Positions 978 to 61,595 of a stretch of 64,000 bases of DNA are shown here, in pieces. Both the position numbers and the translations under genes were made by a program. The DNA is taken from positions 186,001 to 250,000 of IMG/VR virus record IMGVR_UViG_3300035156_000206; one strand, given 5' to 3'. Under the pieces are notes generated by a model that saw only the letters and a program-made list of their open reading frames with translations, was not told the DNA's origin and made no database searches. Numbering within the stretch: the stretch's first letter is position 1; every line of letters begins with the position of its first letter.

Positions 978-3900
978 ATGAAACTAAAATTCCGCCAAGG
1001 CCTCGTTCGCTGCCAAACAGACAATAATAACAATCCTTTGTTCCTGCAACGCACGGGACATGCTGTTTCTCTGGTCGTATCACCTACCCCAACAATCGTC
1101 ACATTCGCTCACACCGATACAGACTATCTGTACACGGAAGGAAAGAATGTCCCTAGTGCTTGGCTAGGTCCTTTCCTTGCTGATAAAGATTATTGGCTGT
1201 ACTGGGATCTCAATATCATCACAGGACTGCGCACGTTCGGTCACACACTTCGCGCTCCAATCACATCAAGAACTCCTCCAGCACAGCCACTGGTGGATCA
1301 GCACTGGTTTGACTTAAACACAACATCAATGCGTGTGTGGAATGGTAACGTCTGGAATACTGTCATCCGCGTGTTTGCATGTAAGTATGCTCTAGGTACT
1401 GTGTTTGAAACAATGCTGAAGCCTCTGTCGAAGCAATTCACTGGCTCACAAGTGTCTCTTAATGTTCCATGCAAATCGGGAGCACTGATCTTCGATACGG
1501 TTGGAAAGCCCTTGAAGACGTCTACAAATACGTTCTTCACTACTGAAACGGGAGCTGCAGTATCCGGATTCGCAAGTGCCATCAACATCGCATCGTTGTT
1601 CAAGGAAGGTGAGGCTCAAGAAGTTATCCCAGCCTACTCAATGGTATACTTCTCAGGCTTCCACAAGCTCAAGCGTGCCAACAATAATACGTCACCGCTA
1701 ATCCCTGTTGGTATGGTCGAGACGGCGCTGACGCCTGGACAAGTTGGCCAAATGGTAACCGAAGGTTTGGTGGTTAGTGATCAATGGAATTGGACCACTG
1801 TCAACCAGCCTCTGTACATTGGAGTCAATGGGGAACTTACCGTAACACAAATGCAGCCTGATCAAGGTCCAATCGCATTCGTTATGTCACCTGACTCTGT
1901 TATGATCATTCGCACACAGTTATCACGTGGCGATCGAGGTAACGATGGTGTGATTGGTGTAGACGGAGCTGATGGTGCCCCAGGTCCCATTGGACCACAA
2001 GGTTTGCCTGGCGATCAAGGAGAAGTTGGTCCAGAAGGTCCAATCGGACCACAAGGTATTCCAGGTAATGATGGAGCAGATGGATCTCTAAACGCCGTAG
2101 CACGTGCGGGCGACGAGATGACTGGTGCACTGATTCTGCATGCTGATCCAATGACTTCGATGCAAGCTGCCACAAAGCAGTACGCAGACTCAGTATCTAC
2201 AGGCCACTTACGTATCCCATGCCGCGTTGGTTCAAAGACTGCACTGACTCTGTATGGCTCTCAAGTGGTAGACAATGTAGTGGTTGTCGTTGGTGATCGT
2301 GTGCTCGTCAAGAACCAAAGCGGAAATGGTCCGCACAAAGACAATGGTATCTACATAGTTACCAATGGCGAATGGACACGGGCAGGCGATGCTGCCACTA
2401 GCCAAAATATGGTTACTGGTATGATTGTCTATATCAGTGAAGGATCGACTCAAGCAGGACAGGCATTTGTTGTCAGCACTGTTGGTAATATTTTCGTCGG
2501 CACCACACCAATTCAATTTATCTCGTTCAACAACTCGCAGGTAATTGTACTGTCAGGTGCCGCTGGTGGATCGGGAACTACTTCGATCCCTGTCACACTG
2601 ACGAACTCTGGTGTAATCCCCGGCTCGTACACACAAGTGACTGTAAACACTGCTGGTCAAGTAACATATGGACAGAGTCCATCCACTATTGCTGGGTATG
2701 GTATTACCAATGCCGTCAACAAGCAAGGTGACAGCATGTCAGGATTCTTGCAGTTGGTAGCAGATCCAATCCTTGGAGACCATGCTGCGACCAAGAACTA
2801 TGTAGATACTCGCACGTCTGGTCCAGGATTTATCACAGCTGGTGGTCTAGCATTCAACGCAAATAGCCTCAGTGTAGTGTCTGTATCACAAAATCGGATT
2901 GTGGTGAATCCAGGTACCATTGACTTGGCATTGACGGGCGTATCTGCTGGTACATATAACAGCGTAACAGTTGACGGATATGGACGTATCACTGCTGGTT
3001 CGTCAGTAGGAAACTCACAGATCACACTAAGTGGAGATGCTACGGGTTCAGGCACATCCGCAATCAATGTGCAACTATCAAGTACTGGTGTTACAGCAGG
3101 TACGTACACTCAGGTGACAGTCGACGTCAAGGGCCGTATCACTACGGGATCTGCCCCAACAACACTTGCGGGATTCGGAATTACAGATGCGATAAAGAAG
3201 ACCGGCGACACGATGACCGGTAATCTGGTAATGGGTACTTCAGATACGGTATCAGCATCAAATCGTTGGATCCAGCGAGTTCGTGATCCTGTCAACCCAC
3301 AAGACGTTGCTACAAAGAACTATGTGGATACAGCAACTGGTGCGGTACTGACACCAGGCAATGGTTTAGCATTCGAAGGCAATCTACTGAACATTGTACC
3401 AGTAAGTACAAACCGAATCGTTGTTGCTCCAGGCACTATTGATTTAGCTACATCCGGAGCTGCTGCTGGAACATACCAACAAGTTACCGTCGACGTGTAT
3501 GGTCGTGTCACTAGTGGTGCTAATCCTCCACTGGTAAATGCAAACATCACACTATCTGGTGACGTGTCTGGTTCTGGTACTTCTGCAATTGCCGTTACGT
3601 TGGCGAACAGTGGCGTTTCGGCTGGTGCGAACTATACCAAGTTTACGGTCAACTCAAAAGGTATTGTAACTGCAGCTGCTACACCAACGACGTTTGCTGG
3701 ACTGGGGTTAGTAGATGGCCTAGATTCATTAAGTGATGTGGTACTAACTACACCTTCATCATTACAGGTATTGACGTACAATGGTGCCAACTGGATTAAC
3801 TCGTCACCAGCACAAGCAACTGACAAGTTGGTAGCTACCAGTTCTACAGATACTACCCCTGGATACTTACACAGCAAATTGGCATTAACACCACGGTTTT

Positions 3901-6762: not shown

Positions 6763-7728
6763 ATGACAGTTAGAGTATACAGATCTACAGACTTGAATGC
6801 CCCTCAGTTGAATATAAACGCGGGCAGTCTGATTACTGTACTGGACGCATGTTTAGTAAATGGGTACGGAGCAAAGACTGGGTCGGGATGGATTAAAACG
6901 CACAGTGGGACAAATGTAGCCGCATATCAGATGCCGTCGGGTACACTCAGGTACATGCGAATCAATGATACGGGTGATAGTGGTGGAGGTACAGCACGCG
7001 TTCGTGGGTTCGAAACTATCACCAACGTAACTACTGGTACCGGAACAGGGTTGTTCCCGACAGACCCTCAAATGTCTGGTGGGTTCAGCATTATGAAGTC
7101 GTATGGGGTTGGATCGGCCTCAACCACCTGGGTACTAATTGCCACCCAGACTATGTTCTATCTTTGGACTAACCCAACCAATAGCGCAAATATAACCAAT
7201 GAATCGTACGTTGGCCTATTTTGCTTTGGCGATCTTATCTCCTATGTGCCAGGAGACATTGGACATACCTATATGTGTGGTCAGGTATCTACAGAGGTAT
7301 ATGCAACATATGCTAACTTTGCAAGAACGATTGCAGGTGGATTTACTGCTACTCAAGGCCAAGTGTTGTGTCGTGGGTATGGACAAGTAACTTCTTCCAT
7401 CCCATGTGCCAAGTTTACGGATGTTTCGAAAAGTGCAGGGCATGGGTTTGCAGGGAACTATCCATTTTCTGTGCAACCATTTCCTGAACCCATAAATCAG
7501 ACCATAAACGTAAGTAAGTTTTGGGTAATCGAAAATAGTCAACCGTTAGTGCGAGGGCATGTGCCTGGTGCTTGGACGTTGCTGCATATTGACCCGTTCA
7601 AGATGGTGAGCGGGTCAGAAGGTAACACCCTCACATTTACCACAGGTGAAATGGCAGGTAAAACTATTGAGTGCTTCTACACTGGTAACAGCAGTAGAAT
7701 ATGGTTAGAAATATCAAATACATGGTAA
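6763..7728 (+). CDS. Tail-fibre-associated protein, paralogue 3 of 4
   Basis: Starts MTVRVYRSTDLNAP, ends LEISNTW; AGGAG RBS. Confidence 0.7.
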   Translation: MTVRVYRSTDLNAPQLNINAGSLITVLDACLVNGYGAKTGSGWIKTHSGTNVAAYQMPSGTLRYMRINDTGDSGGGTARVRGFETITNVTTGTGTGLFPTDPQMSGGFSIMKSYGVGSASTTWVLIATQTMFYLWTNPTNSANITNESYVGLFCFGDLISYVPGDIGHTYMCGQVSTEVYATYANFARTIAGGFTATQGQVLCRGYGQVTSSIPCAKFTDVSKSAGHGFAGNYPFSVQPFPEPINQTINVSKFWVIENSQPLVRGHVPGAWTLLHIDPFKMVSGSEGNTLTFTTGEMAGKTIECFYTGNSSRIWLEISNTW

Positions 7729-7738
7729 AGGTAACACA

Positions 7739-8662
7739 ATGACAGTCCGAGTTTATAGATCGACAGACGCCAGTGCACCAATTATGTCTGGCTCTCCTGG
7801 TGCACTAATTTCTCTGCTAGATGCATGTCTAGTGAATGGATATGGTTCGTCTGTCGCAGCTGGCTGGACAAAACCATTCTTCACGGGTGCTACCGTTGCT
7901 GCATACAAGCAAGGCGCTGGTAGCAATGGTATGTATTTTAAGTTTTTTGATACAGGGACTACGTGGTCAAATTGCTACGGCGCCGAGACTATGACTGACA
8001 TTAACACTACGACCGGAGATTTCCCAAGCCCAGGAACTCGCTCGGTATCTGGTTATAACCCAATTGTTTTCAAAAGCGCATATGGAGACTCAAGCGCTGT
8101 TCCATGGATGTTGGTAGCAAGCGAAAAGTGGTTCATGTTGTTCATAACCAGTGTGCGTGATGCGCTCGCTATTCCAAACTACATCACTGGTTTTTATTGT
8201 GGCGATATAGTATCAGAGCGGGCAAATGATGCGTACGCTACAGCGATCCTATCTGGTACATCATTCCAATACTATGACCAGCAGTTTGCAGCAACCCTAA
8301 ATAATTTGAATGGTATACAACCTGGTAACATGCTTGCACGAGCTTGGTATCAATTGGGAAATTGTGTTCACGTGAGTAAAACAGCAGATCCAGTGCGGGC
8401 GTACACAGGCACATACCCATCAATGACAGATAGCCAGATCTCTCTGTCCCCATGGGTTCTTATGGAAGGCGGCATTGTTCGTGGAAGAGTGCCAGGGATT
8501 TATGTTCCTACCTGGAACAATGGAAATGGTAATACATTTACCATGGTAGATGGACAGCGCGTAAGCTTTACAGAGGGTGAATTGGCTGGTAAAACGTTTG
8601 AAGCAAAATTCATAGCACCAAGCCAACAGTTTCTCTTAATCGAAATATCTAACACATACTGA
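7739..8662 (+). CDS. Tail-fibre-associated protein, paralogue 4 of 4
   Basis: Starts MTVRVYRSTDASAP, ends IEISNTY. Confidence 0.7.
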   Translation: MTVRVYRSTDASAPIMSGSPGALISLLDACLVNGYGSSVAAGWTKPFFTGATVAAYKQGAGSNGMYFKFFDTGTTWSNCYGAETMTDINTTTGDFPSPGTRSVSGYNPIVFKSAYGDSSAVPWMLVASEKWFMLFITSVRDALAIPNYITGFYCGDIVSERANDAYATAILSGTSFQYYDQQFAATLNNLNGIQPGNMLARAWYQLGNCVHVSKTADPVRAYTGTYPSMTDSQISLSPWVLMEGGIVRGRVPGIYVPTWNNGNGNTFTMVDGQRVSFTEGELAGKTFEAKFIAPSQQFLLIEISNTY

Positions 8663-8666
8663 TACC

Positions 8667-10157
8667 ATGACAGCACATACATACTGGAGACTGACCACAG
8701 AAACCAACAACGGTGGGGCAGTTCTGAACATTAGTGAGATTGAATTCCGTACATCACTAAATGGAGCAAACGTTGCTTTAGCATCGATGACTGCTGCTCC
8801 ATCAATAGTAAACAGGTCTAGCAACGTGTTAGGGGCAGCTGCCCTTACAATGATACAAAATGGATCCGTTGATGATAACTCATTAACTGTTCCACTGCCT
8901 TTCACGGTGTCATTCCTTGGTGTGAGCTACAATACCGTGTATGTTGGATCAAATAGCTATGTCACATTCGGGGCTTCAGCTGGTGGGCTGTATTCGGGAG
9001 TTACAGGGTCAAATCCTGCAATACCTAACATTCAAATATGTACAGGAGATCGCAGCTATCAACGCGTGTATACTGGTACCGAAAATAGTGGTGCTACATT
9101 TCGCATTCGCTGGGAAGGAAGCACCTCCACAGGTGGTACACCAGGCTCGCCTACTATGGTGTGGGAGATAACGTTCAATCGCGATACTCCTGATGTAATC
9201 CTGGTCGACATGGGAACAAATGCGGCAGAAGGCAGTGGAGCAACTGGTGTATCAGATTCGACTCAGTATGTTCTTGGTTTTGCAAATGGCACAACAAATA
9301 CTGGTTACACACTCGCACCCGGCAACACTAATCCAACTGGGTTCATTACTACATCAGCAGGGGGTGGGCTGGCAGCGTTTGATGGAGCACCAGGGACGGC
9401 TTGGTCTGTAGCACCAGGTGCTTGGATCCAATACAGATTTTCAGTAGCCAAAGACATTATCCAGCACGTAGTGCGTGCGGACAATATTGCAGTTAATGCA
9501 CCAAAGCGTTGGTCTATTTCTTATTCAGATGATGGTGTTTCTTGGACCAACACTGTGACCATTATGGCACAAGAAAATTGGGGACCTTCCGAGGCACGAA
9601 CATTTACTGATACACAGTGGCCACCAAAGGCAAATGCGGTTACGTATGGCACTGCTGAACCAATCCCAGGTGCAGTGTCGCCGTCCACAATTGGGACAAC
9701 TGCACCGAGACAGTTTTACGCCGCAAAGCTGACAAATGCTGGATGGCCAGCAACAATTGCACCTATTCAGGTAAAGCTTGATTTGAATTCAACCGCATCC
9801 AGGTATCGGTACCTTCCTTGGTGGGCAGTTGACTACAGAGGATACTTCCCAAATGATGCAACAACATTGAATCTGCCAGCATTCAATAACGGCTACACAT
9901 TGCCTTCGCAAGGTATTTCTGTATCTGGCACAATTTCTGGTCAAGTGCAAGAAGAAGGATTACCGGTAGCTGGGAAATTGGTAAGGTTGTACTACCGCCC
10001 AACAGGAGCATTGATTGCGAATGCAATATCGGATGCAACAGGACGATACACATTCAGGGGGCTAGAGCCTAGCGCGAATGTCTACGTAATCACAGCATTC
10101 AACCAAGCACCACTGCAATACGATGCAGTGATCCACGACAACATATCGGCACTATAA
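8667..10157 (+). CDS. Putative receptor-binding/adhesin protein (split discoidin F5/8-like fold, C-terminal carboxypeptidase-regulatory-like beta domain)
   Basis: YWRL...ISEIEF at the N-terminus, APKRWSISYSDDGVSWT discoidin-like motif, ISGQV...VRLYYR.TG...SDATGRYTF at the C-terminus. Confidence 0.55.
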   Translation: MTAHTYWRLTTETNNGGAVLNISEIEFRTSLNGANVALASMTAAPSIVNRSSNVLGAAALTMIQNGSVDDNSLTVPLPFTVSFLGVSYNTVYVGSNSYVTFGASAGGLYSGVTGSNPAIPNIQICTGDRSYQRVYTGTENSGATFRIRWEGSTSTGGTPGSPTMVWEITFNRDTPDVILVDMGTNAAEGSGATGVSDSTQYVLGFANGTTNTGYTLAPGNTNPTGFITTSAGGGLAAFDGAPGTAWSVAPGAWIQYRFSVAKDIIQHVVRADNIAVNAPKRWSISYSDDGVSWTNTVTIMAQENWGPSEARTFTDTQWPPKANAVTYGTAEPIPGAVSPSTIGTTAPRQFYAAKLTNAGWPATIAPIQVKLDLNSTASRYRYLPWWAVDYRGYFPNDATTLNLPAFNNGYTLPSQGISVSGTISGQVQEEGLPVAGKLVRLYYRPTGALIANAISDATGRYTFRGLEPSANVYVITAFNQAPLQYDAVIHDNISAL

Positions 10158-58390: not shown

Positions 58391-58879
58391 CTATTCGATT
58401 GAAGCCTGAAGGTAGTTGATGGCTGATTGGAGCCGCAGAATATCGTCCTTAGCCAATCCAATCATCTTATTGCACTTACCACATAATAGCCCACGCACAT
58501 TACCTGTACTATGGCAATGATCTAAGTTGGCGGCTGTAGATTGGTTTCCTGTCCCAATGAACAGTTGAAAACATATTGCACATTTGTGATCTTGTTTTGC
58601 CAACAAAGTGGCATGTTGCTCTAATGTGATCCCATAGTTTCGGAGCAAGTGATTACGACGGGTAGAGAGTTTGACTTGGTCTGTCTGAAGGTATTCTTGA
58701 TAGTTCTTGCTGGCTCTGTACTTAGCCCTGGCTGCGGTCTTGGCCTCAGAAGGAATGTAGGTGCATTCAATACACCTGCCAGAGACGTGGCGCTCACCTA
58801 TGTGACCACGCTTGCATGGTGTGGTTGACATGTATTTGGTTAAGCCTGCAGCAATGGCTTGTTGTCTTGGTGAATTCAT
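58391..58879 (-). mobile_element. HNH / endonuclease-VII-type homing endonuclease
   Basis: CKRGH...RCIEC, YGITLE, Q...CAIC and DHCHSTG.VRGLLC..CN..IG motifs. Confidence 0.88.
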
Positions 58880-58905: not shown

Positions 58906-58936
58906 GAAGGCCCGACACTAACCTGGCCGGGCCTTC
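58906..58936 (-). terminator. Strong hairpin between the RNA modules and the HNH gene
   Basis: GAAGGCCCG-13nt-CGGGCCTTC 9-bp stem; no U-tract, so it may be a processing or protective stem. Confidence 0.6.
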
Positions 58937-58947
58937 TATTTGATTTG

Positions 58948-59067
58948 ATGACAAGTCAATGTGTTTACCAATTTCACCAACCCCGCATCAGAAGTACTCT
59001 GCTGATGCAACGCACTTTTGGTGCGGGGTGAAGGACTCGAACCTCCAAGGAGTTAACTATATGTCAT
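58948..59067 (-). ncRNA. Circularly permuted tRNA-like module B
   Basis: 5'-ATGACA-tata-GTTAA-ctcctt-[GGAGG TTCGAGT CCTTC]-ACCCCGC-A-CCA-linker-GCGGGGT-TG-[GTG AAATTGGTAAA CAC]-A-TTGAC-t-TGTCAT; the acceptor strands pair 7/7. Confidence 0.75.
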
Positions 59068-59090
59068 TGGTTCCAGATTATGTATCACGT

Positions 59091-59226
59091 CGACTGCTGA
59101 GCTTTGCTAATAAAATGGCACTCTACCTCTGAGCTACCAGCCACCAAAAGAGACTATTGCGAATCTGTTTTGGTTGGCCGGGATGGATTCGAACCACCGA
59201 CTTCCGATTTGGGACTCAACACCGCG
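59091..59226 (-). ncRNA. Circularly permuted tRNA-like module A
   Basis: 5'-TGTTGAGT..AAATCGG-aagtc-[GGTGG TTCGAAT CCATC]-CCGGCCA-A-CCA-linker-TGGCTGG-TA-[GCTC AGAGGTA GAGT]-G-CCATTT..GCTCAGCA; the acceptor strands pair 7/7 with one G-U. Confidence 0.75.
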
Positions 59227-59391
59227 CTTTATTGTACAATCCAATAAACCGATAAAGCTGTATAGGCAAGAAACTAAGGCTGACTAGATACTAAATGTAC
59301 CTGTTAAGCTAAGACTAATGATAAAGCTACCTATTCTTTAATACCTTGCGTGCGGTGGGAATCACTAACTATGACCCCACCCACATATTTC
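59227..59391 (-). ncRNA. Structured non-coding segment preceding the tRNA-like modules
   Basis: Long GTGGGTGGG/CCCACCGCA hairpin after the upstream stop, a TTAG-repeat tract, and a TTTATTG/CAATAAA hairpin; no credible ORF. Confidence 0.5.
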
Positions 59392-60192
59392 TTAGAAGCC
59401 TTCTGGGTGCAAGAACGAGATCAGCTTTTGCCCGATCTTGGTCTGGCGCACTGGCGTCGCGTTTGCACGCATACGCGCTTGCTTCGTGGCCTGGATCAGA
59501 TCGTCCAGACGACCCAGCAAGGCCGATTTTTCGGTGGTGGTCATTGCCGACGACCAGGTTTCTTTGGTGAAGGTGCCGACGTTGACGGTCTCTTCCCACT
59601 TTTCGATCTGTGCCGGATGCTTGTCCGTTGGAGCGACCAGCACTTTGTGCTTGATTTCTTTCGCGGTCTTGGCGCGAACTTCGGCATTTGCCTGGCGGAA
59701 GACGTGCTTGCCGCGGGCCGAATCAGGAACCCAGTTGATGCCTGGCGCCAGCGTAGGAATGACTTCGTACACGGTGCGCAGCGCTTTCAGCTTGGTTTCC
59801 ATGCCCAGCAGGAAGCCGACTGGCAGCTTTTCTGCCAACACGGTGCCGTCAGTCAGGACCAGGTCAGCGACGGCGTCTTGATTCGTTGCTTCTTTTTGCA
59901 GCACGACGTCGTAGTAACGGGTGACGCCGTCGAGTACGTACTGCAGCTTTTCGTGGACGGTGGTAACCATTTCCAGGTGCTGCTCTTCAGCCTTTTCCGT
60001 TGCTGCGGTTGCCGCTTCGTTACTGGCGTCGCCGGAGAACATTTTCAGGGTACGATGCGAACCGGTGAAGTGGGTTGCTTTGTCCGAGAAGGTCTTGATT
60101 GCTTCAGGGATGATCTTGTTTGCAACGCCTTGAACATCGACTTCAACTGCCAGAATCTCATGCAGCATTGGTGCTTTTTTGTTATCGCTCAT
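59392..60192 (-). CDS. Coiled-coil protein of unknown function (DUF7873-like, recalled from memory)
   Basis: LHEILAVE, KATHF.G..RT, TTV.EKL, QKEATNQ.A.ADL, IPTL.PG..W, HPAQI and AR.RAN motifs; strongly C/G-ending codons; GAGG RBS. Confidence 0.8.
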   Translation of the reverse strand: MSDNKKAPMLHEILAVEVDVQGVANKIIPEAIKTFSDKATHFTGSHRTLKMFSGDASNEAATAATEKAEEQHLEMVTTVHEKLQYVLDGVTRYYDVVLQKEATNQDAVADLVLTDGTVLAEKLPVGFLLGMETKLKALRTVYEVIPTLAPGINWVPDSARGKHVFRQANAEVRAKTAKEIKHKVLVAPTDKHPAQIEKWEETVNVGTFTKETWSSAMTTTEKSALLGRLDDLIQATKQARMRANATPVRQTKIGQKLISFLHPEGF

Positions 60193-60268
60193 ATACCCTC
60201 AAAATGGTTACGTGTTAATCTGATATTTGTTGTTCAGAGGATTTCTCTCTCAAAACATCATGAAGTGC

Positions 60269-60306
60269 ACTTTAAACTGTTTACTTCATTTTGACAACGA
60301 TTATTT
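60269..60306 (-). promoter_or_regulatory. Early promoter with AAATAATCG upstream element
   Basis: AAATAATCG-TTGTCA-17-TAAAGT. Confidence 0.7.
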
Positions 60307-60443
60307 CAACTGATTTTTCAACAACTCTTGGGAGTGGATATGCTTCTTCGGACCGCACTCCCAAAACTACTTACTACCGCCCTTCCTCCTACAAACCATC
60401 CGCATGCACATCTCTGTAGGCAGTCTCTAACGTGACAGAGATC

Positions 60444-60482
60444 AGTATATAGAAATCTCCGTTTGGTTGACAACGATTATTT
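60444..60482 (-). promoter_or_regulatory. Early promoter with AAATAATCG upstream element
   Basis: AAATAATCG-TTGTCA-18-TATACT. Confidence 0.7.
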
Positions 60483-61520
60483 TTATGGACGAAAGTGGCG
60501 TGGTGGCATCTCTGCCAGCTGTTTGATGCGGTTCTTTTTGCTGGACGTAAATCCGAAGTCGCCTTCCGATTCTGATGATGAGGGGCTCTCAGTCATCATA
60601 GCACGCAGCTTCTGTGCCGCCCAATCGACATCACGCCGGAACACACGGGTCAGAATGATGAACTCGCGCAGGTGGGCAATCGAGAACCCTTCTGACAGGT
60701 TTACGTACTTTTCCACTTCCTCTGCTGTCAGCCCTGGCTCTTTGGCTTTCAGGTAAATTGCCCGCGCCGCTGATGTTGGCATACCAACCTTGATCACCGA
60801 ATCGAAACGGGATGGACGGTCGATGAACCGACGATCCATTCGTTCAGGGTAGTTTGTGGTAGCAACAAAGATGATGTTGTCCACTTGGTTCTCCCCGTCC
60901 AGAATGGAAAGGTAGTTTGCTTCACCGTATGTTTGTACCAGTGCATCCATATCTTCCAACAGCGCCACGATTTGGCGATGTGGTTCGATTTTTCGGATCA
61001 GCTTCAGGCACTCAGCGGCATAATGTGGATGACCAACCACAAATGCGATACCTTGCATTTTGTTGATAACGATATCTACCAGCTGGGCAAGGGTAGACGT
61101 CTTTCCTGAACCAGGAGGACCCCACAGAAAAATACCACGCTTGTAGATCATCTTGCGGGCAATGAATTCAGGCTTGAGGTCAGCAAACTCCTCAATCTCA
61201 CGCAGTACCGATTCGGACGCGCTATCAGGGAGATGAATGAGGCCATCAGTGGCATTCTCTACCTTGGTCAGGTAGAATCCAGCAGCATCTGAGTGGCCCC
61301 CTGTATACATGCCACATTCGAGAGCTGGAGTAGAATCTTGCACACCCCAGTAAGTCTTACCACTTCGTGCCCAACGAGATGGGTTATTGGAGCTGGAAAT
61401 ATCAGACGAGTTGGTAGAGACAGGTGTCTCTGATACCGCCACACAGTCTCCGCTAGACGTTGGTTTGAGATCGGTACCAACTGTGGACATCAACTCACTG
61501 ATTTCATCTACATTACTCAT
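60483..61520 (-). CDS. AAA+ ATPase
   Basis: GIFLWGPPGSGKT, LLEDMD, LDG, ATTNYPE and RPSRFD motifs. Confidence 0.9.
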   Translation of the reverse strand: MSNVDEISELMSTVGTDLKPTSSGDCVAVSETPVSTNSSDISSSNNPSRWARSGKTYWGVQDSTPALECGMYTGGHSDAAGFYLTKVENATDGLIHLPDSASESVLREIEEFADLKPEFIARKMIYKRGIFLWGPPGSGKTSTLAQLVDIVINKMQGIAFVVGHPHYAAECLKLIRKIEPHRQIVALLEDMDALVQTYGEANYLSILDGENQVDNIIFVATTNYPERMDRRFIDRPSRFDSVIKVGMPTSAARAIYLKAKEPGLTAEEVEKYVNLSEGFSIAHLREFIILTRVFRRDVDWAAQKLRAMMTESPSSSESEGDFGFTSSKKNRIKQLAEMPPRHFRP

Positions 61521-61556
61521 TATTGCTCCAGGGTGTGTTGTGGAAAACTAAGGTGA

Positions 61557-61595
61557 ACTATATCTTTTTTCGTTGCTGGTGGACAACGATTATTT
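61557..61595 (-). promoter_or_regulatory. Early promoter with AAATAATCG upstream element
   Basis: AAATAATCG-TTGTCC-18-TATAGT. Confidence 0.7.

What the first reader, a model, noticed from the sequence alone, without database searches (positions are those of the whole stretch)
58906..60482. Protein-plus-structured-RNA cassette: coiled-coil gene with twin early promoters and a ~450-nt non-coding tail
Seen: two AAATAATCG-type promoters drive a 266-aa coiled-coil gene with strongly biased codons. It is followed, with no U-tailed terminator, by a long hairpin, a TTAG-repeat tract, the two permuted tRNA-like modules and a closing 9-bp hairpin. Inference: the protein and RNA may form a ribonucleoprotein, or the tRNA-like folds may be processing/stability signals for this mRNA. 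An HNH endonuclease sits directly behind it, as homing endonucleases often do beside tRNA loci.
Basis: partly seen in the sequence, partly recalled or inferred. Interest (0 to 1): 0.72.

Follow-up and report, generated by a model that had tools for sequence, protein, structure and literature searches.

The report
Phage protein with tRNA-mimic RNAs
A jumbo phage carries a gene for an unknown protein (DUF7873) followed by two non-coding RNAs built like tRNAs with their halves swapped, and the same pairing recurs in well over a hundred phages of unrelated hosts, so it is probably an undescribed phage ribonucleoprotein related in design to bacterial Y RNAs.

Summary
On the minus strand, two sigma-70-like promoters precede a 266-aa gene (Pfam DUF7873). 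A ~490-nt gene-free tail follows. It holds a post-stop hairpin, a conserved leader, two circularly permuted tRNA-like modules (X, Y) and a closing hairpin.

In each module the order is T-arm, 3' acceptor strand, discriminator, CCA, linker, complementary 5' acceptor strand, D-arm. ARAGORN calls no tRNA here. Rfam gives only sub-threshold YrlA (Y RNA-like) and permuted-tmRNA matches.

Comparison settles it. In 58 of 75 unique IMG/VR loci with a DUF7873 gene, a covariance model finds the module about 165 nt downstream on the same strand. It is also the best hit in each whole genome of five cultured phages. All 16 core pairs covary (98.9% paired against 65% shuffled), as does the G15:C48/A15:U48 tertiary pair. 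The flanks form a closing rod. No other neighbouring protein family is conserved.

This record has no Ro60/TROVE, DUF2828 or RtcB gene.

Best reading: a co-transcribed protein-RNA pair of Y-RNA (YrlA) design with a new protein partner. Host RNase P probably nicks the RNA into a two-piece, CCA-ended tRNA mimic. Binding, processing and biological role are untested.

The parts
60444..60482 (-). Upstream promoter-like site: the 16-mer AAATAATCGTTGTCAA (60467-60482) overlapping TTGTCA-18-TATACT.
   Evidence: Relatives keep CGTTGTC/A-N17-TAtAAT sites before the gene, in two copies in L105 and L107.
60269..60306 (-). Proximal promoter-like site: the same 16-mer (60291-60306) overlapping TTGTCA-17-TAAAGT.
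59392..60192 (-). DUF7873 gene, 266 aa, with strongly biased codons. Function unknown. Proposed protein partner of the RNAs.
   Evidence: Pfam PF25283 at E 4.7e-64. GC3 0.68. AF2 model pLDDT 82.9, alpha/beta. Only uncharacterised structural relatives: 3kdq at Z 9.6, and AFDB 'uncharacterized' entries.
59350..59384 (-). Hairpin just after the stop codon (GTGGGTGGG / CCCACC(G)CAC). Probably a 3' stabiliser of the processed mRNA (inference).
   Evidence: Sequence. Each of 7 relatives has its own hairpin of different sequence at the same place. RNAalifold gave no consensus because the stems are out of register.
59253..59340 (-). It ends in TTGCCTATACAGCTTTA. Possible endonuclease processing region (inference).
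   Evidence: Near-invariant blocks in 7 relatives. The motifs are unique to this locus in the genome. A related CAGCTTYAGG lies 5' of the rod in distant loci.
59086..59228 (-). RNA X (type 1). Closing rod 59228-59213 pairs with 59101-59086. T-arm 59198-59182. Acceptor 3' strand 59181-59175. Discriminator A 59174. CCA 59173-59171. Linker hairpin to 59144. Acceptor 5' strand 59143-59137. D-arm 59134-59120. Conserved TTAGCAAAG loop.
   Evidence: Own scan, 7/7 acceptor. CM R1 60.6 bits at 59090-59230. RNAalifold on 7 relatives: 23 of 42 pairs compensatory. Rfam YrlA 28.1 bits, below the gathering score.
58906..59046 (-). RNA Y (type 2, class-II/Leu-like D-arm). T-arm 59046-59030. Acceptor 3' strand 59029-59023. 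A 59022. CCA 59021-59019. Linker hairpins. Acceptor 5' strand 58986-58980. D-arm 58977-58961. AU-rich hairpin 58960-58944. Long GC hairpin 58936-58906 with conserved loop AGGTTAG.
   Evidence: 19 of 39 pairs compensatory. RNAfold z-score -5.2. R1 32.6 bits. The same type occurs in L049, L059, L074, L089, phiRSL1 and FBKp24.
58391..58879 (-). Endonuclease VII/HNH-type gene. A mobile insertion behind the cassette, not part of it.
   Evidence: PF02945 at E 9e-23 and PHROG endonuclease VII. Present in 3 of 7 relatives only.
60483..61595 (-). AAA ATPase gene (60483-61520), preceded by the third copy of the 16-mer (61580-61595). Possibly co-regulated with the cassette in this clade. It is not a general partner.
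   Evidence: A homologue (29% id, E 8e-33) directly precedes permuted modules in L158. Otherwise it was found only in L109.

Best explanation
The cassette is one transcription unit driven by two sigma-70-like promoters. It encodes an abundant phage protein of unknown fold family (DUF7873) and two structured non-coding RNAs that mimic tRNA in circularly permuted order.

Shown: the RNAs keep the tRNA elbow and acceptor end. These are the T-arm, the D-arm, U8, A14, the 15:48 tertiary pair, a 7-bp acceptor stem, a discriminator base and usually CCA. In type 1 (X) the anticodon arm is replaced by a long rod formed by the RNA's own 5' and 3' flanks. This is the design of bacterial YrlA Y RNAs.

Shown: gene and RNA are inherited together across phages of Proteobacteria, Actinobacteria and Cyanobacteria, and nothing else in the neighbourhood is conserved.

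Inferred:
1. The primary transcript is cut in the conserved single-stranded leader, which separates the hairpin-capped mRNA from the RNAs.
2. Host RNase P cuts 5' of the acceptor 5' strand, helped by the 7-bp stem and the encoded RCCA. Host exonucleases then trim the linker back to CCA. The product is a nicked two-piece tRNA-like RNA, as was shown experimentally for Mycobacterium smegmatis YrlA.
3. DUF7873 binds this RNA, taking the place that Ro60 has in Rsr-YrlA loci.
4. The particle presents a tRNA-shaped surface to a host tRNA-binding activity, as a decoy or to recruit it. Which activity is unknown.
For: Linkage.
- CM R1 gives hits of 52 bits or more downstream on the same strand in 58 of 75 unique IMG/VR DUF7873 loci. 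The median distance from stop codon to T-arm is 165 nt, and only one strong hit lies elsewhere in these loci.
- It is the top hit in each whole genome tested: own genome, RHph_Y65, phiRSL1, FBKp24, Vibrio D505 and Gordonia Guey18. Ordinary tRNA-tRNA junctions score 38 bits or less.
- All nine loci from the bacterial/archaeal genome collection also have it.
- No other protein family recurs within 1.5 kb on either side in 84 loci.

Structure.
- 16 of 16 core pairs have compensatory changes. 98.9% of cells are paired against 65% in shuffles and 40-48% when slid.
- Levitt pair: G15:C48 in 36, A15:U48 in 21, other combinations in 9.
- Cognate flanks pair at 28.6 bp against 16.5 bp for swapped flanks, p = 1e-10.
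- CCA follows the discriminator in 51 of 66 modules.

Precedent. YrlA is a permuted tRNA-like RNA bound by Ro60. The M. smegmatis RNA, with a 7-bp acceptor stem, is cut by RNase P and carries CCA in vivo (PMC4201824).

Partner swap. The same RNA core (52-62 bits) follows a phrog_850 'RNA-binding protein' with a vWA domain in L125.

Expression. Codon bias and conserved promoters, including twin copies in some relatives.
Against: - There is no direct evidence that the RNA is made, cut or bound. No RNA-seq run was listed, and the complex predictor does not fold protein-RNA jobs.
- The protein is neutral (pI 7.1) and has no recognisable RNA-binding domain or informative structural relative.
- Four of seven independently found permuted modules have no DUF7873 gene nearby, so the RNA does not strictly need this protein.
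- 17 of 75 loci lack a strong hit. Four of those are truncated, and most of the rest have weaker hits or modules found by my own scan.
- The covariation alignment was fitted to the model.
- The discriminator and acceptor sequences vary freely, so no common aminoacylation identity exists.
Confidence: 0.6

Rival explanations
1. Cis-acting 3' processing and stability module. The tRNA-like folds exist to recruit RNase P (and RNase E in the leader). This gives the DUF7873 mRNA a defined, protected 3' end, as the mascRNA tRNA-like element does for MALAT1. The released RNAs are by-products, and the protein has an unrelated job.
For: The RNAs always lie downstream on the same strand, with no U-tailed terminator between gene and RNA. 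A hairpin follows the stop codon in every relative. The 7-bp acceptor stem plus RCCA are RNase P determinants (PMC4201824).
Against: One tRNA-like hairpin would suffice for processing. Instead, the family conserves a full elbow with tertiary pairs, a long closing rod with conserved internal-loop sequences, and often a second module. In L015/L042 the module lies upstream of the gene. The same RNA follows unrelated genes in other phages.
Confidence: 0.15
2. An ordinary Ro60-type Y RNA (YrlA). It works with a Ro60 supplied by the host, or encoded in the missing 16% of the genome, and DUF7873 is a bystander.
For: Rfam YrlA is the best family match (28.1 bits here; up to 38.6 in relatives). The architecture is the same. 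The record is only 84% complete.
Against: All matches fall below the gathering score of 69. No TROVE, DUF2828 or RtcB is found in the record. The Ro60-binding motif GNCGAAN0-1G is present in only 3 of 66 5' flanks. The tight, widespread linkage to DUF7873 is unexplained by this reading.
Confidence: 0.07
3. A working permuted tRNA or two-piece tmRNA that takes part in translation after processing.
For: Permuted order, 7-bp acceptor stem and encoded CCA. Rfam's permuted beta_tmRNA model matches the T-arm/acceptor/linker part. Y has a hairpin where an anticodon arm would be.
Against: X has no anticodon loop. Y's hairpin loop is not conserved in length or sequence among 7 relatives. There is no tag frame or pseudoknots, and ARAGORN calls nothing here although it finds the genome's real permuted tmRNA at 8650-9044. 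Position 3:70 is G:U in only 2 of 70. The discriminator is variable.
Confidence: 0.03
4. Debris: fragments of tandem tRNA genes broken by deletions or by the neighbouring homing endonuclease.
For: Tandem identical tRNAs can look permuted, and one such chance junction was seen (L150). An endonuclease gene is adjacent.
Against: There is no paralogy to the phage's own 29 tRNAs. Order and structure are conserved with compensatory changes across about 70 lineages. The element is present whether or not the endonuclease gene is there.
Confidence: 0.01

Closest known systems
YrlA (Y RNA-like) RNAs with Ro60/Rsr in bacteria and mycobacteriophages (Rfam RF02553; Chen et al. 2014, PMC4201824)
   Same: Circularly permuted tRNA-like domain in the order T-arm, acceptor-like stem, D-arm. 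G15:C48 / A15:U48 covariation. 5' and 3' ends pair into a stem. Encoded next to its protein partner on the same strand. Often two RNAs per locus.
   Different: No Ro60/TROVE gene in the record. The partner gene is DUF7873 (about 250 aa, alpha/beta, unrelated). The Ro60-binding GNCGAAN0-1G motif is absent. Scores lie far below Rfam's gathering threshold. A 7-bp acceptor stem with encoded CCA is the rule here, whereas among characterised YrlAs only the M. smegmatis RNA has it.
M. smegmatis YrlA processing (RNase P cleavage plus CCA, two halves held together)
   Same: A 7-bp acceptor stem closed by a loop. The predicted RNase P site is at the 5' end of the acceptor 5' strand.
   Different: Here the CCA is already encoded in 51 of 66 modules. 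Processing has not been tested.
Two-piece tmRNA from permuted genes, with SmpB
   Same: Permuted gene order. A tRNA-like domain without an anticodon loop, from which a long helix emerges. A small dedicated protein partner is conceivable by analogy.
   Different: No tag reading frame, no pseudoknots and no G3:U70 alanine identity. The phage has a separate real tmRNA gene.
MALAT1/mascRNA-type tRNA-like 3'-end processing elements
   Same: A tRNA-like fold downstream of a long transcript that RNase P could use to make a 3' end.
   Different: That system is eukaryotic, not permuted, has one element and no closing rod.
Permuted tRNA genes of Cyanidioschyzon merolae
   Same: The 3' half is encoded upstream of the 5' half.
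   Different: Those give complete decoding tRNAs through a circular intermediate and the splicing endonuclease. Here there is no conserved anticodon loop.

Membership tests
YrlA / bacterial Y RNA (RF02553) | Match reaches Rfam's gathering score (69 bits) | tested here: not met
   28.1 bits for X. Relatives score 29-38.6 bits. The same score is reached by an ordinary tRNA-Arg/tRNA-Thr junction in this genome.
YrlA / bacterial Y RNA (RF02553) | tRNA-like domain in permuted order (T, acceptor-like stem, D) with tRNA tertiary signatures, including 15:48 covariation | tested here: met
YrlA / bacterial Y RNA (RF02553) | 5' and 3' ends pair into a stem below the tRNA-like domain | tested here: met
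   16-bp rod with compensatory changes in 7 relatives. Cognate flanks pair more than swapped flanks, p = 1e-10.
YrlA / bacterial Y RNA (RF02553) | Encoded within about 4 kb of a Ro60 (TROVE) gene on the same strand | tested here: not met
   No TROVE (PF05731) or DUF2828 match in the 292-kb record, which is 84% complete. None appears among called neighbours of relatives.
YrlA / bacterial Y RNA (RF02553) | GNCGAAN0-1G Ro60-binding motif near the 5' end | tested here: not met
   Absent from X. Present in 3 of 66 5' flanks across the family.
YrlA / bacterial Y RNA (RF02553) | Bound by Ro60; modified by TruB/DusA; (M. smegmatis) cut by RNase P | not testable with these tools
   Needs experiments.
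Two-piece (permuted) tmRNA | Tag reading frame, pseudoknots and full-length model match | tested here: not met
   Rfam beta_tmRNA matches only model positions 86-150 of 331. ARAGORN calls none here but does call one at genome 8650-9044.
Two-piece (permuted) tmRNA | G3:U70 alanine identity pair | tested here: not met
   X has G3:C70 and Y has G3:C70. In the family, position 3:70 is G:U in 2 of 70 (pair 52/178).
Functional permuted tRNA gene | Complete anticodon arm with a conserved 7-nt loop | tested here: not met
   X: replaced by the rod. Y: the hairpin loop varies in length and sequence among relatives.
Pfam DUF7873 (PF25283) | HMM score above the curated cut-off over the full length | tested here: met
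   216.9 bits against a cut-off of 27, covering residues 9-262.
Endonuclease VII / HNH-type homing endonuclease (neighbour gene) | Domain match, and presence/absence polymorphism at one site among relatives | tested here: met
   PF02945 at E 9e-23. Present in the window, L104 and L106; absent in L105 and L107-L109.

The most novel reading that the evidence does not exclude
DUF7873 plus its nicked, CCA-ended tRNA mimic is a widespread phage device aimed at the host's tRNA biology. It would be a protein-held decoy. It could soak up defence toxins that attack tRNA acceptor ends or elbows. Alternatively it could capture a tRNA-processing or translation factor for the phage. Ro60-like proteins and an AAA ATPase would serve as alternative partners of the same RNA in other phages.
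Probability: 0.2. Interest if true: 0.9.

Novelty: new variant of a known kind. Interest (0 to 1): 0.78.

Why it matters
The RNA and the protein are both unannotated. Every homologue is labelled 'hypothetical protein'. No paper in the searched library mentions DUF7873. In GenBank records the RNA region is left blank, covered by tiny CDSs, or mis-called as a suppressor tRNA.

The pair nevertheless occurs in well over a hundred phage lineages. These include culturable phages of Klebsiella, Ralstonia, Vibrio, Rhizobium, Gordonia, Arthrobacter and cyanobacteria.

It extends the Y-RNA/tRNA-mimic design beyond Ro60. It would give DUF7873 a first functional context. It also offers tractable systems for asking what tRNA-shaped decoys do during infection, a question tied to the current interest in tRNA-targeting anti-phage defences.

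Tried and rejected
- blastn of the region against GenBank phages gave no match.
- RNA-seq evidence: no RNA run was listed for the locus.
- Complex prediction on protein plus RNA X was not folded by the tool and is no evidence either way.
- Fold searches gave only proteins of unknown function: PDB 3kdq (Z 9.6) and uncharacterised AFDB and Atlas clusters. Weak Pur-alpha/FliF rows were discarded. A PDB sequence-profile search found nothing. PHROGs, NCBIfam and PADLOC gave no usable match for the protein.
- RNAalifold on the post-stop hairpin gave no consensus because the stems are out of register. The hairpins were read by eye instead.
- AAA ATPase as a general third partner: rejected. It is found only in the window, L109 and L158.
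- A genome-wide 'AAATAATCG promoter class': rejected. There are three copies, all local.
- The leader as a phage promoter: rejected. Its motifs are unique to this locus, and no conserved -10 element follows TTGCCT.
- Using the Rfam YrlA score as proof of identity: rejected, because an ordinary tRNA junction scores the same.
- Homology of the L125 protein to solved Ro60 structures was not detected by sequence, so 'Ro60-like' there rests on domain architecture and the PHROG name only.
Full report
SETTING. The window is bases 186001-250000 of a 291,967-bp IMG/VR jumbo-phage record, estimated 84% complete. Its DNA is held by a biocrust metagenome. The genome carries 29 tRNA genes and a permuted tmRNA gene elsewhere, but ARAGORN finds none in the window. 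All genes at the locus run on the minus strand.

OBSERVATION CHECK.
- The exact 16-mer AAATAATCGTTGTCAA occurs at 60291-60306 and 60467-60482. A one-mismatch copy lies at 61580-61595. That is 3 matches against 0.09 expected.
- The first two overlap sigma-70-like hexamer pairs, TTGTCA-17-TAAAGT and TTGTCA-18-TATACT.
- Close relatives keep CGTTGTC/A-N17-TAtAAT sites in front of the gene, in two copies in L105 and L107.
- The 16-mer is not a genome-wide promoter class. These three copies are the only ones in the genome, and the third sits in front of the neighbouring AAA ATPase gene.
- The ORF 59392-60192(-) is a full-length member of Pfam DUF7873 (E 4.7e-64).
- Its GC is 57% against about 46% around it. 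GC3 is 0.68 against a genome median of 0.54, and the codon choice is that of a highly expressed gene.
- It is not a plain coiled coil. The AlphaFold model (pLDDT 82.9) has four long helices packed on beta hairpins.
- No U-tailed terminator follows on the minus strand.

THE TAIL. Reading 59391 to 58906 on the minus strand gives five elements.
1. A hairpin right after the stop codon.
2. A leader with AGCTTTA-like repeats.
3. Module X: T-arm GGTGG-TTCGAAT-CCATC, acceptor 3' strand CCGGCCA, A, CCA, a 30-nt linker hairpin, acceptor 5' strand TGGCTGG, TA, D-arm GCTCAGAGGTAGAGT.
4. Module Y: GGAGG-TTCGAGT-CCTTC, ACCCCGC, A, CCA, linker, GCGGGGT, TG, and a Leu-like D-arm GTGAAATTGGTAAACAC. An AU-rich hairpin follows.
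5. The GC hairpin 58936-58906.

In both modules the two acceptor strands are 7/7 complementary across the linker. The modules have no close paralogue among the phage's own tRNAs. Rfam gives only sub-threshold matches: YrlA at 28.1 bits (gathering score 69), and the permuted beta_tmRNA model over its T-arm/acceptor part. That YrlA score alone means little, because a normal tRNA-Arg/tRNA-Thr junction in this genome scores the same.

COMPARATIVE EVIDENCE.
- A protein-based scan of IMG/VR returned 10 and then 80 loci with DUF7873 homologues at 34-54% identity.
- A strict scan of my own required a 5/5 T-stem, a T-loop, a 7/7 acceptor, a linker of 3-60 nt and a D-arm. It found a permuted module in 64 of the 80 loci. 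Nearly all lay on the gene's strand just downstream, and only about three hits lay elsewhere in those loci.
- A covariance model (R1) built from 28 of these modules finds hits of 52 bits or more downstream on the same strand in 58 of 75 unique loci. The median distance from stop codon to T-arm is 165 nt (IQR 134-215).
- Of the 17 loci without a strong hit, 4 are truncated and most of the rest have weaker hits or modules found by my own scan.
- In cultured phages the homologues are all 'hypothetical protein'. There are 75 GenBank records: Vibrio, Rhizobium, Gordonia, Klebsiella/Serratia, Arthrobacter, Ralstonia phiRSL1, Pseudanabaena and Microcoleus.
- In five of them that were fetched, the module sits in the unannotated gap after the gene.
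- It is also the best R1 hit in each whole genome (50-80 bits), while tRNA junctions score 38 bits or less.
- In 185,579 bacterial and archaeal genomes only nine loci were found, mostly small MAG contigs plus four Myxococcota. All have an R1 hit downstream.
- No other protein family recurs within 1.5 kb on either side in 84 loci.

STRUCTURE.
- RNAalifold on 25 modules predicts the T-arm, the 7-bp acceptor stem and the D-arm, with compensatory changes at all 16 pairs.
- On 70 model-aligned hits, 98.9% of cells pair, against 65% in shuffles and 40-48% when partners are slid. There are 356 double-change cells against 80 in shuffles, reached by 0 of 500 shuffles. The caveat is that this alignment was fitted to the model.
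- tRNA tertiary signatures are kept: U8 in 65 of 66 modules, A14 in 64 of 66, and a TTCRANY T-loop.
- The Levitt pair covaries: G15:C48 in 36, A15:U48 in 21, and G15 never with U48.
- CCA follows the discriminator in 51 of 66 modules, and the discriminator can be any base.
- Constrained folding shows that the 5' flank pairs with the 3' flank to form an anticodon-stem equivalent and then a long rod.
- Cognate flanks make 28.6 inter-flank pairs, against 16.5 when 3' flanks are swapped between loci (p = 1e-10).
- Recurrent sequence in the rod's loops (ATTAGC on the 3' side; AGTAATTGG ... TCAATGAAAG) was seen by eye. It has not been tested statistically.

CLOSE RELATIVES OF THE WINDOW. Six jumbo-phage contigs whose protein is 61-77% identical align with the window over the whole tail.
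- For X, RNAalifold gives the T-arm, the acceptor stem continued by the linker hairpin (CCA pairs with UGG), the D-arm and a 16-bp closing rod. 23 of 42 pairs are compensatory.
- For Y it gives the T-arm, acceptor stem, linker hairpin, D-arm and the long terminal hairpin, whose loop AGGTTAG is conserved. 19 of 39 pairs are compensatory.
- Y alone folds far better than shuffles (z = -5.2). X is less distinct (z = -1.8).
- The type-2 design (Leu-like D-arm, then a short hairpin, then a GC hairpin) recurs in distant phages, before or after the type-1 RNA.
- The endonuclease VII gene is present in only 3 of the 7, so it is a mobile insertion.

WHAT IT IS. The type-1 RNA has the architecture that Chen et al. 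described for YrlA. That architecture is a permuted tRNA-like domain on top of a stem formed by the RNA's ends, encoded beside its protein partner (PMC4201824).

It fails the membership tests for YrlA proper:
- it is below the Rfam gathering score;
- there is no TROVE, DUF2828 or RtcB in the record;
- the Ro60-binding motif is absent.

It is not a tmRNA: no tag frame, and no G3:U70. It is not a decoding tRNA: there is no conserved anticodon loop.

An independent DNA-pattern scan of IMG/VR gave 83 matches.
- 75 were ordinary tRNA junctions with non-complementary acceptor strands. None of these lay near a DUF7873 gene.
- 8 had 7/7 complementary acceptor strands. One of them (L150) was a chance junction between tRNA-Asp and tRNA-Ala.
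- The remaining 7 were true permuted modules.

Of these seven:
- three follow a DUF7873 gene;
- one (L125) follows a 484-aa DUF2828+DUF7788+vWA protein of phrog_850, 'RNA-binding protein';
- one (L158) follows a ligase gene and an AAA ATPase homologous to the window's (29% id, E 8e-33);
- two follow small ORFs.

So one RNA design is paired with different proteins in different phages, and DUF7873 is the commonest partner seen here.

HOW IT PROBABLY WORKS.
- Shown: the conserved structure, the linkage, and the promoter-like sites.
- Inferred from the anatomy and from the M. smegmatis precedent, the following steps:
  - The unit is transcribed from the twin promoters.
  - The hairpin after the stop codon and the conserved single-stranded leader allow the mRNA and the RNAs to be separated.
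  - RNase P cuts at the 5' end of the acceptor 5' strand, since a 7-bp stem and RCCA are its determinants.
  - The linker is trimmed to CCA, leaving a nicked two-piece tRNA mimic.
  - DUF7873 binds this RNA.
- What the particle does is open. The options are a decoy or hijacker of a tRNA-binding host activity, a Y-RNA-like adaptor for RNA decay or repair, or merely an mRNA 3'-end device.

I put about 0.95 on a real conserved ncRNA family. I put 0.85 on functional coupling to DUF7873, and about 0.55-0.6 each on direct binding and on RNase P processing.

NOVELTY. No paper in the searched library mentions DUF7873. Searches for permuted tRNA or tRNA-like RNAs in phages returned nothing on this pair. 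The jumbo-phage survey by Iyer et al. mentions only ROT/TROVE proteins with a tRNA-like partner in a few phages (PMC7824862). I rate the finding a new variant of a known kind: YrlA-type design with a new partner, a new sequence family, and a broad phage distribution.

Noticed in passing
Genome G000:C1:8650-9044 (outside the window); tRNAs at 2.4-5.8 kb and 258-272 kb: The phage encodes a permuted (two-piece) tmRNA with tag ANDSQFKVAAYA, and 29 tRNAs including tandem duplicates.
   Followed up: partly
window 60291-60306, 60467-60482, 61580-61595 (-): The 16-mer AAATAATCGTTGTCAA occurs only at these three places in the 292-kb genome. Two copies lie before the DUF7873 gene and one before the AAA ATPase gene. 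This suggests local co-regulation rather than a general promoter class.
   Followed up: yes
window 60483-61520 (-); L158:6271-7446 (-); L109:1-1670: The AAA ATPase upstream of the cassette is homologous (29% id, E 8e-33) to an AAA ATPase that directly precedes two permuted tRNA-like modules in an unrelated contig lacking DUF7873. That contig has an ATP-dependent ligase gene next door. In L109 the ATPase gene carries an intein.
   Followed up: partly
L125:4644-6098 (+) and modules at L125:6337-6464 and 6785-6904: A 484-aa DUF2828+DUF7788+vWA protein (phrog_850, 'RNA-binding protein') is followed by two R1-type permuted modules. This looks like a Ro60-style locus using the same RNA core. Homology to Ro60 was not shown by sequence.
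   Followed up: partly
L101 (Klebsiella phage vB_KpM_FBKp24, MW394391.1) 3004-3088; L102 (Vibrio phage D505) 2781-3023: The annotated 'tRNA-Sup-TTA' in FBKp24 ends exactly at the CCA of the type-1 module. It is a mis-call made of rod, T-arm and acceptor 3' strand. The small CDSs VPHD505_0060/0061 lie in the gene-to-RNA tail, and 0060 overlaps the start of the RNA.
   Followed up: yes
window 58391-58879 (-): The Endonuclease VII/HNH-type gene is present at this site in only 3 of 7 related phages. This fits a homing endonuclease that has inserted just beyond the terminal hairpin of RNA Y.
   Followed up: yes
L242, L243, L244, L246 (Myxococcota contigs, incl. Paraliomyxa miuraensis NZ_JAOVZF010000158.1): DUF7873 homologues occur on large Myxococcota contigs, each with a weaker core-only R1 hit about 240-350 nt downstream. 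Whether these are prophages or chromosomal copies was not resolved.
   Followed up: no
W01 (Rhizobium phage RHph_Y65, MN988525.1) 138803-138925: A second 60-bit R1 hit lies 4.4 kb downstream of the main one, inside the tRNA region. It may be a further module or a tandem-tRNA junction; this was not examined.
   Followed up: no
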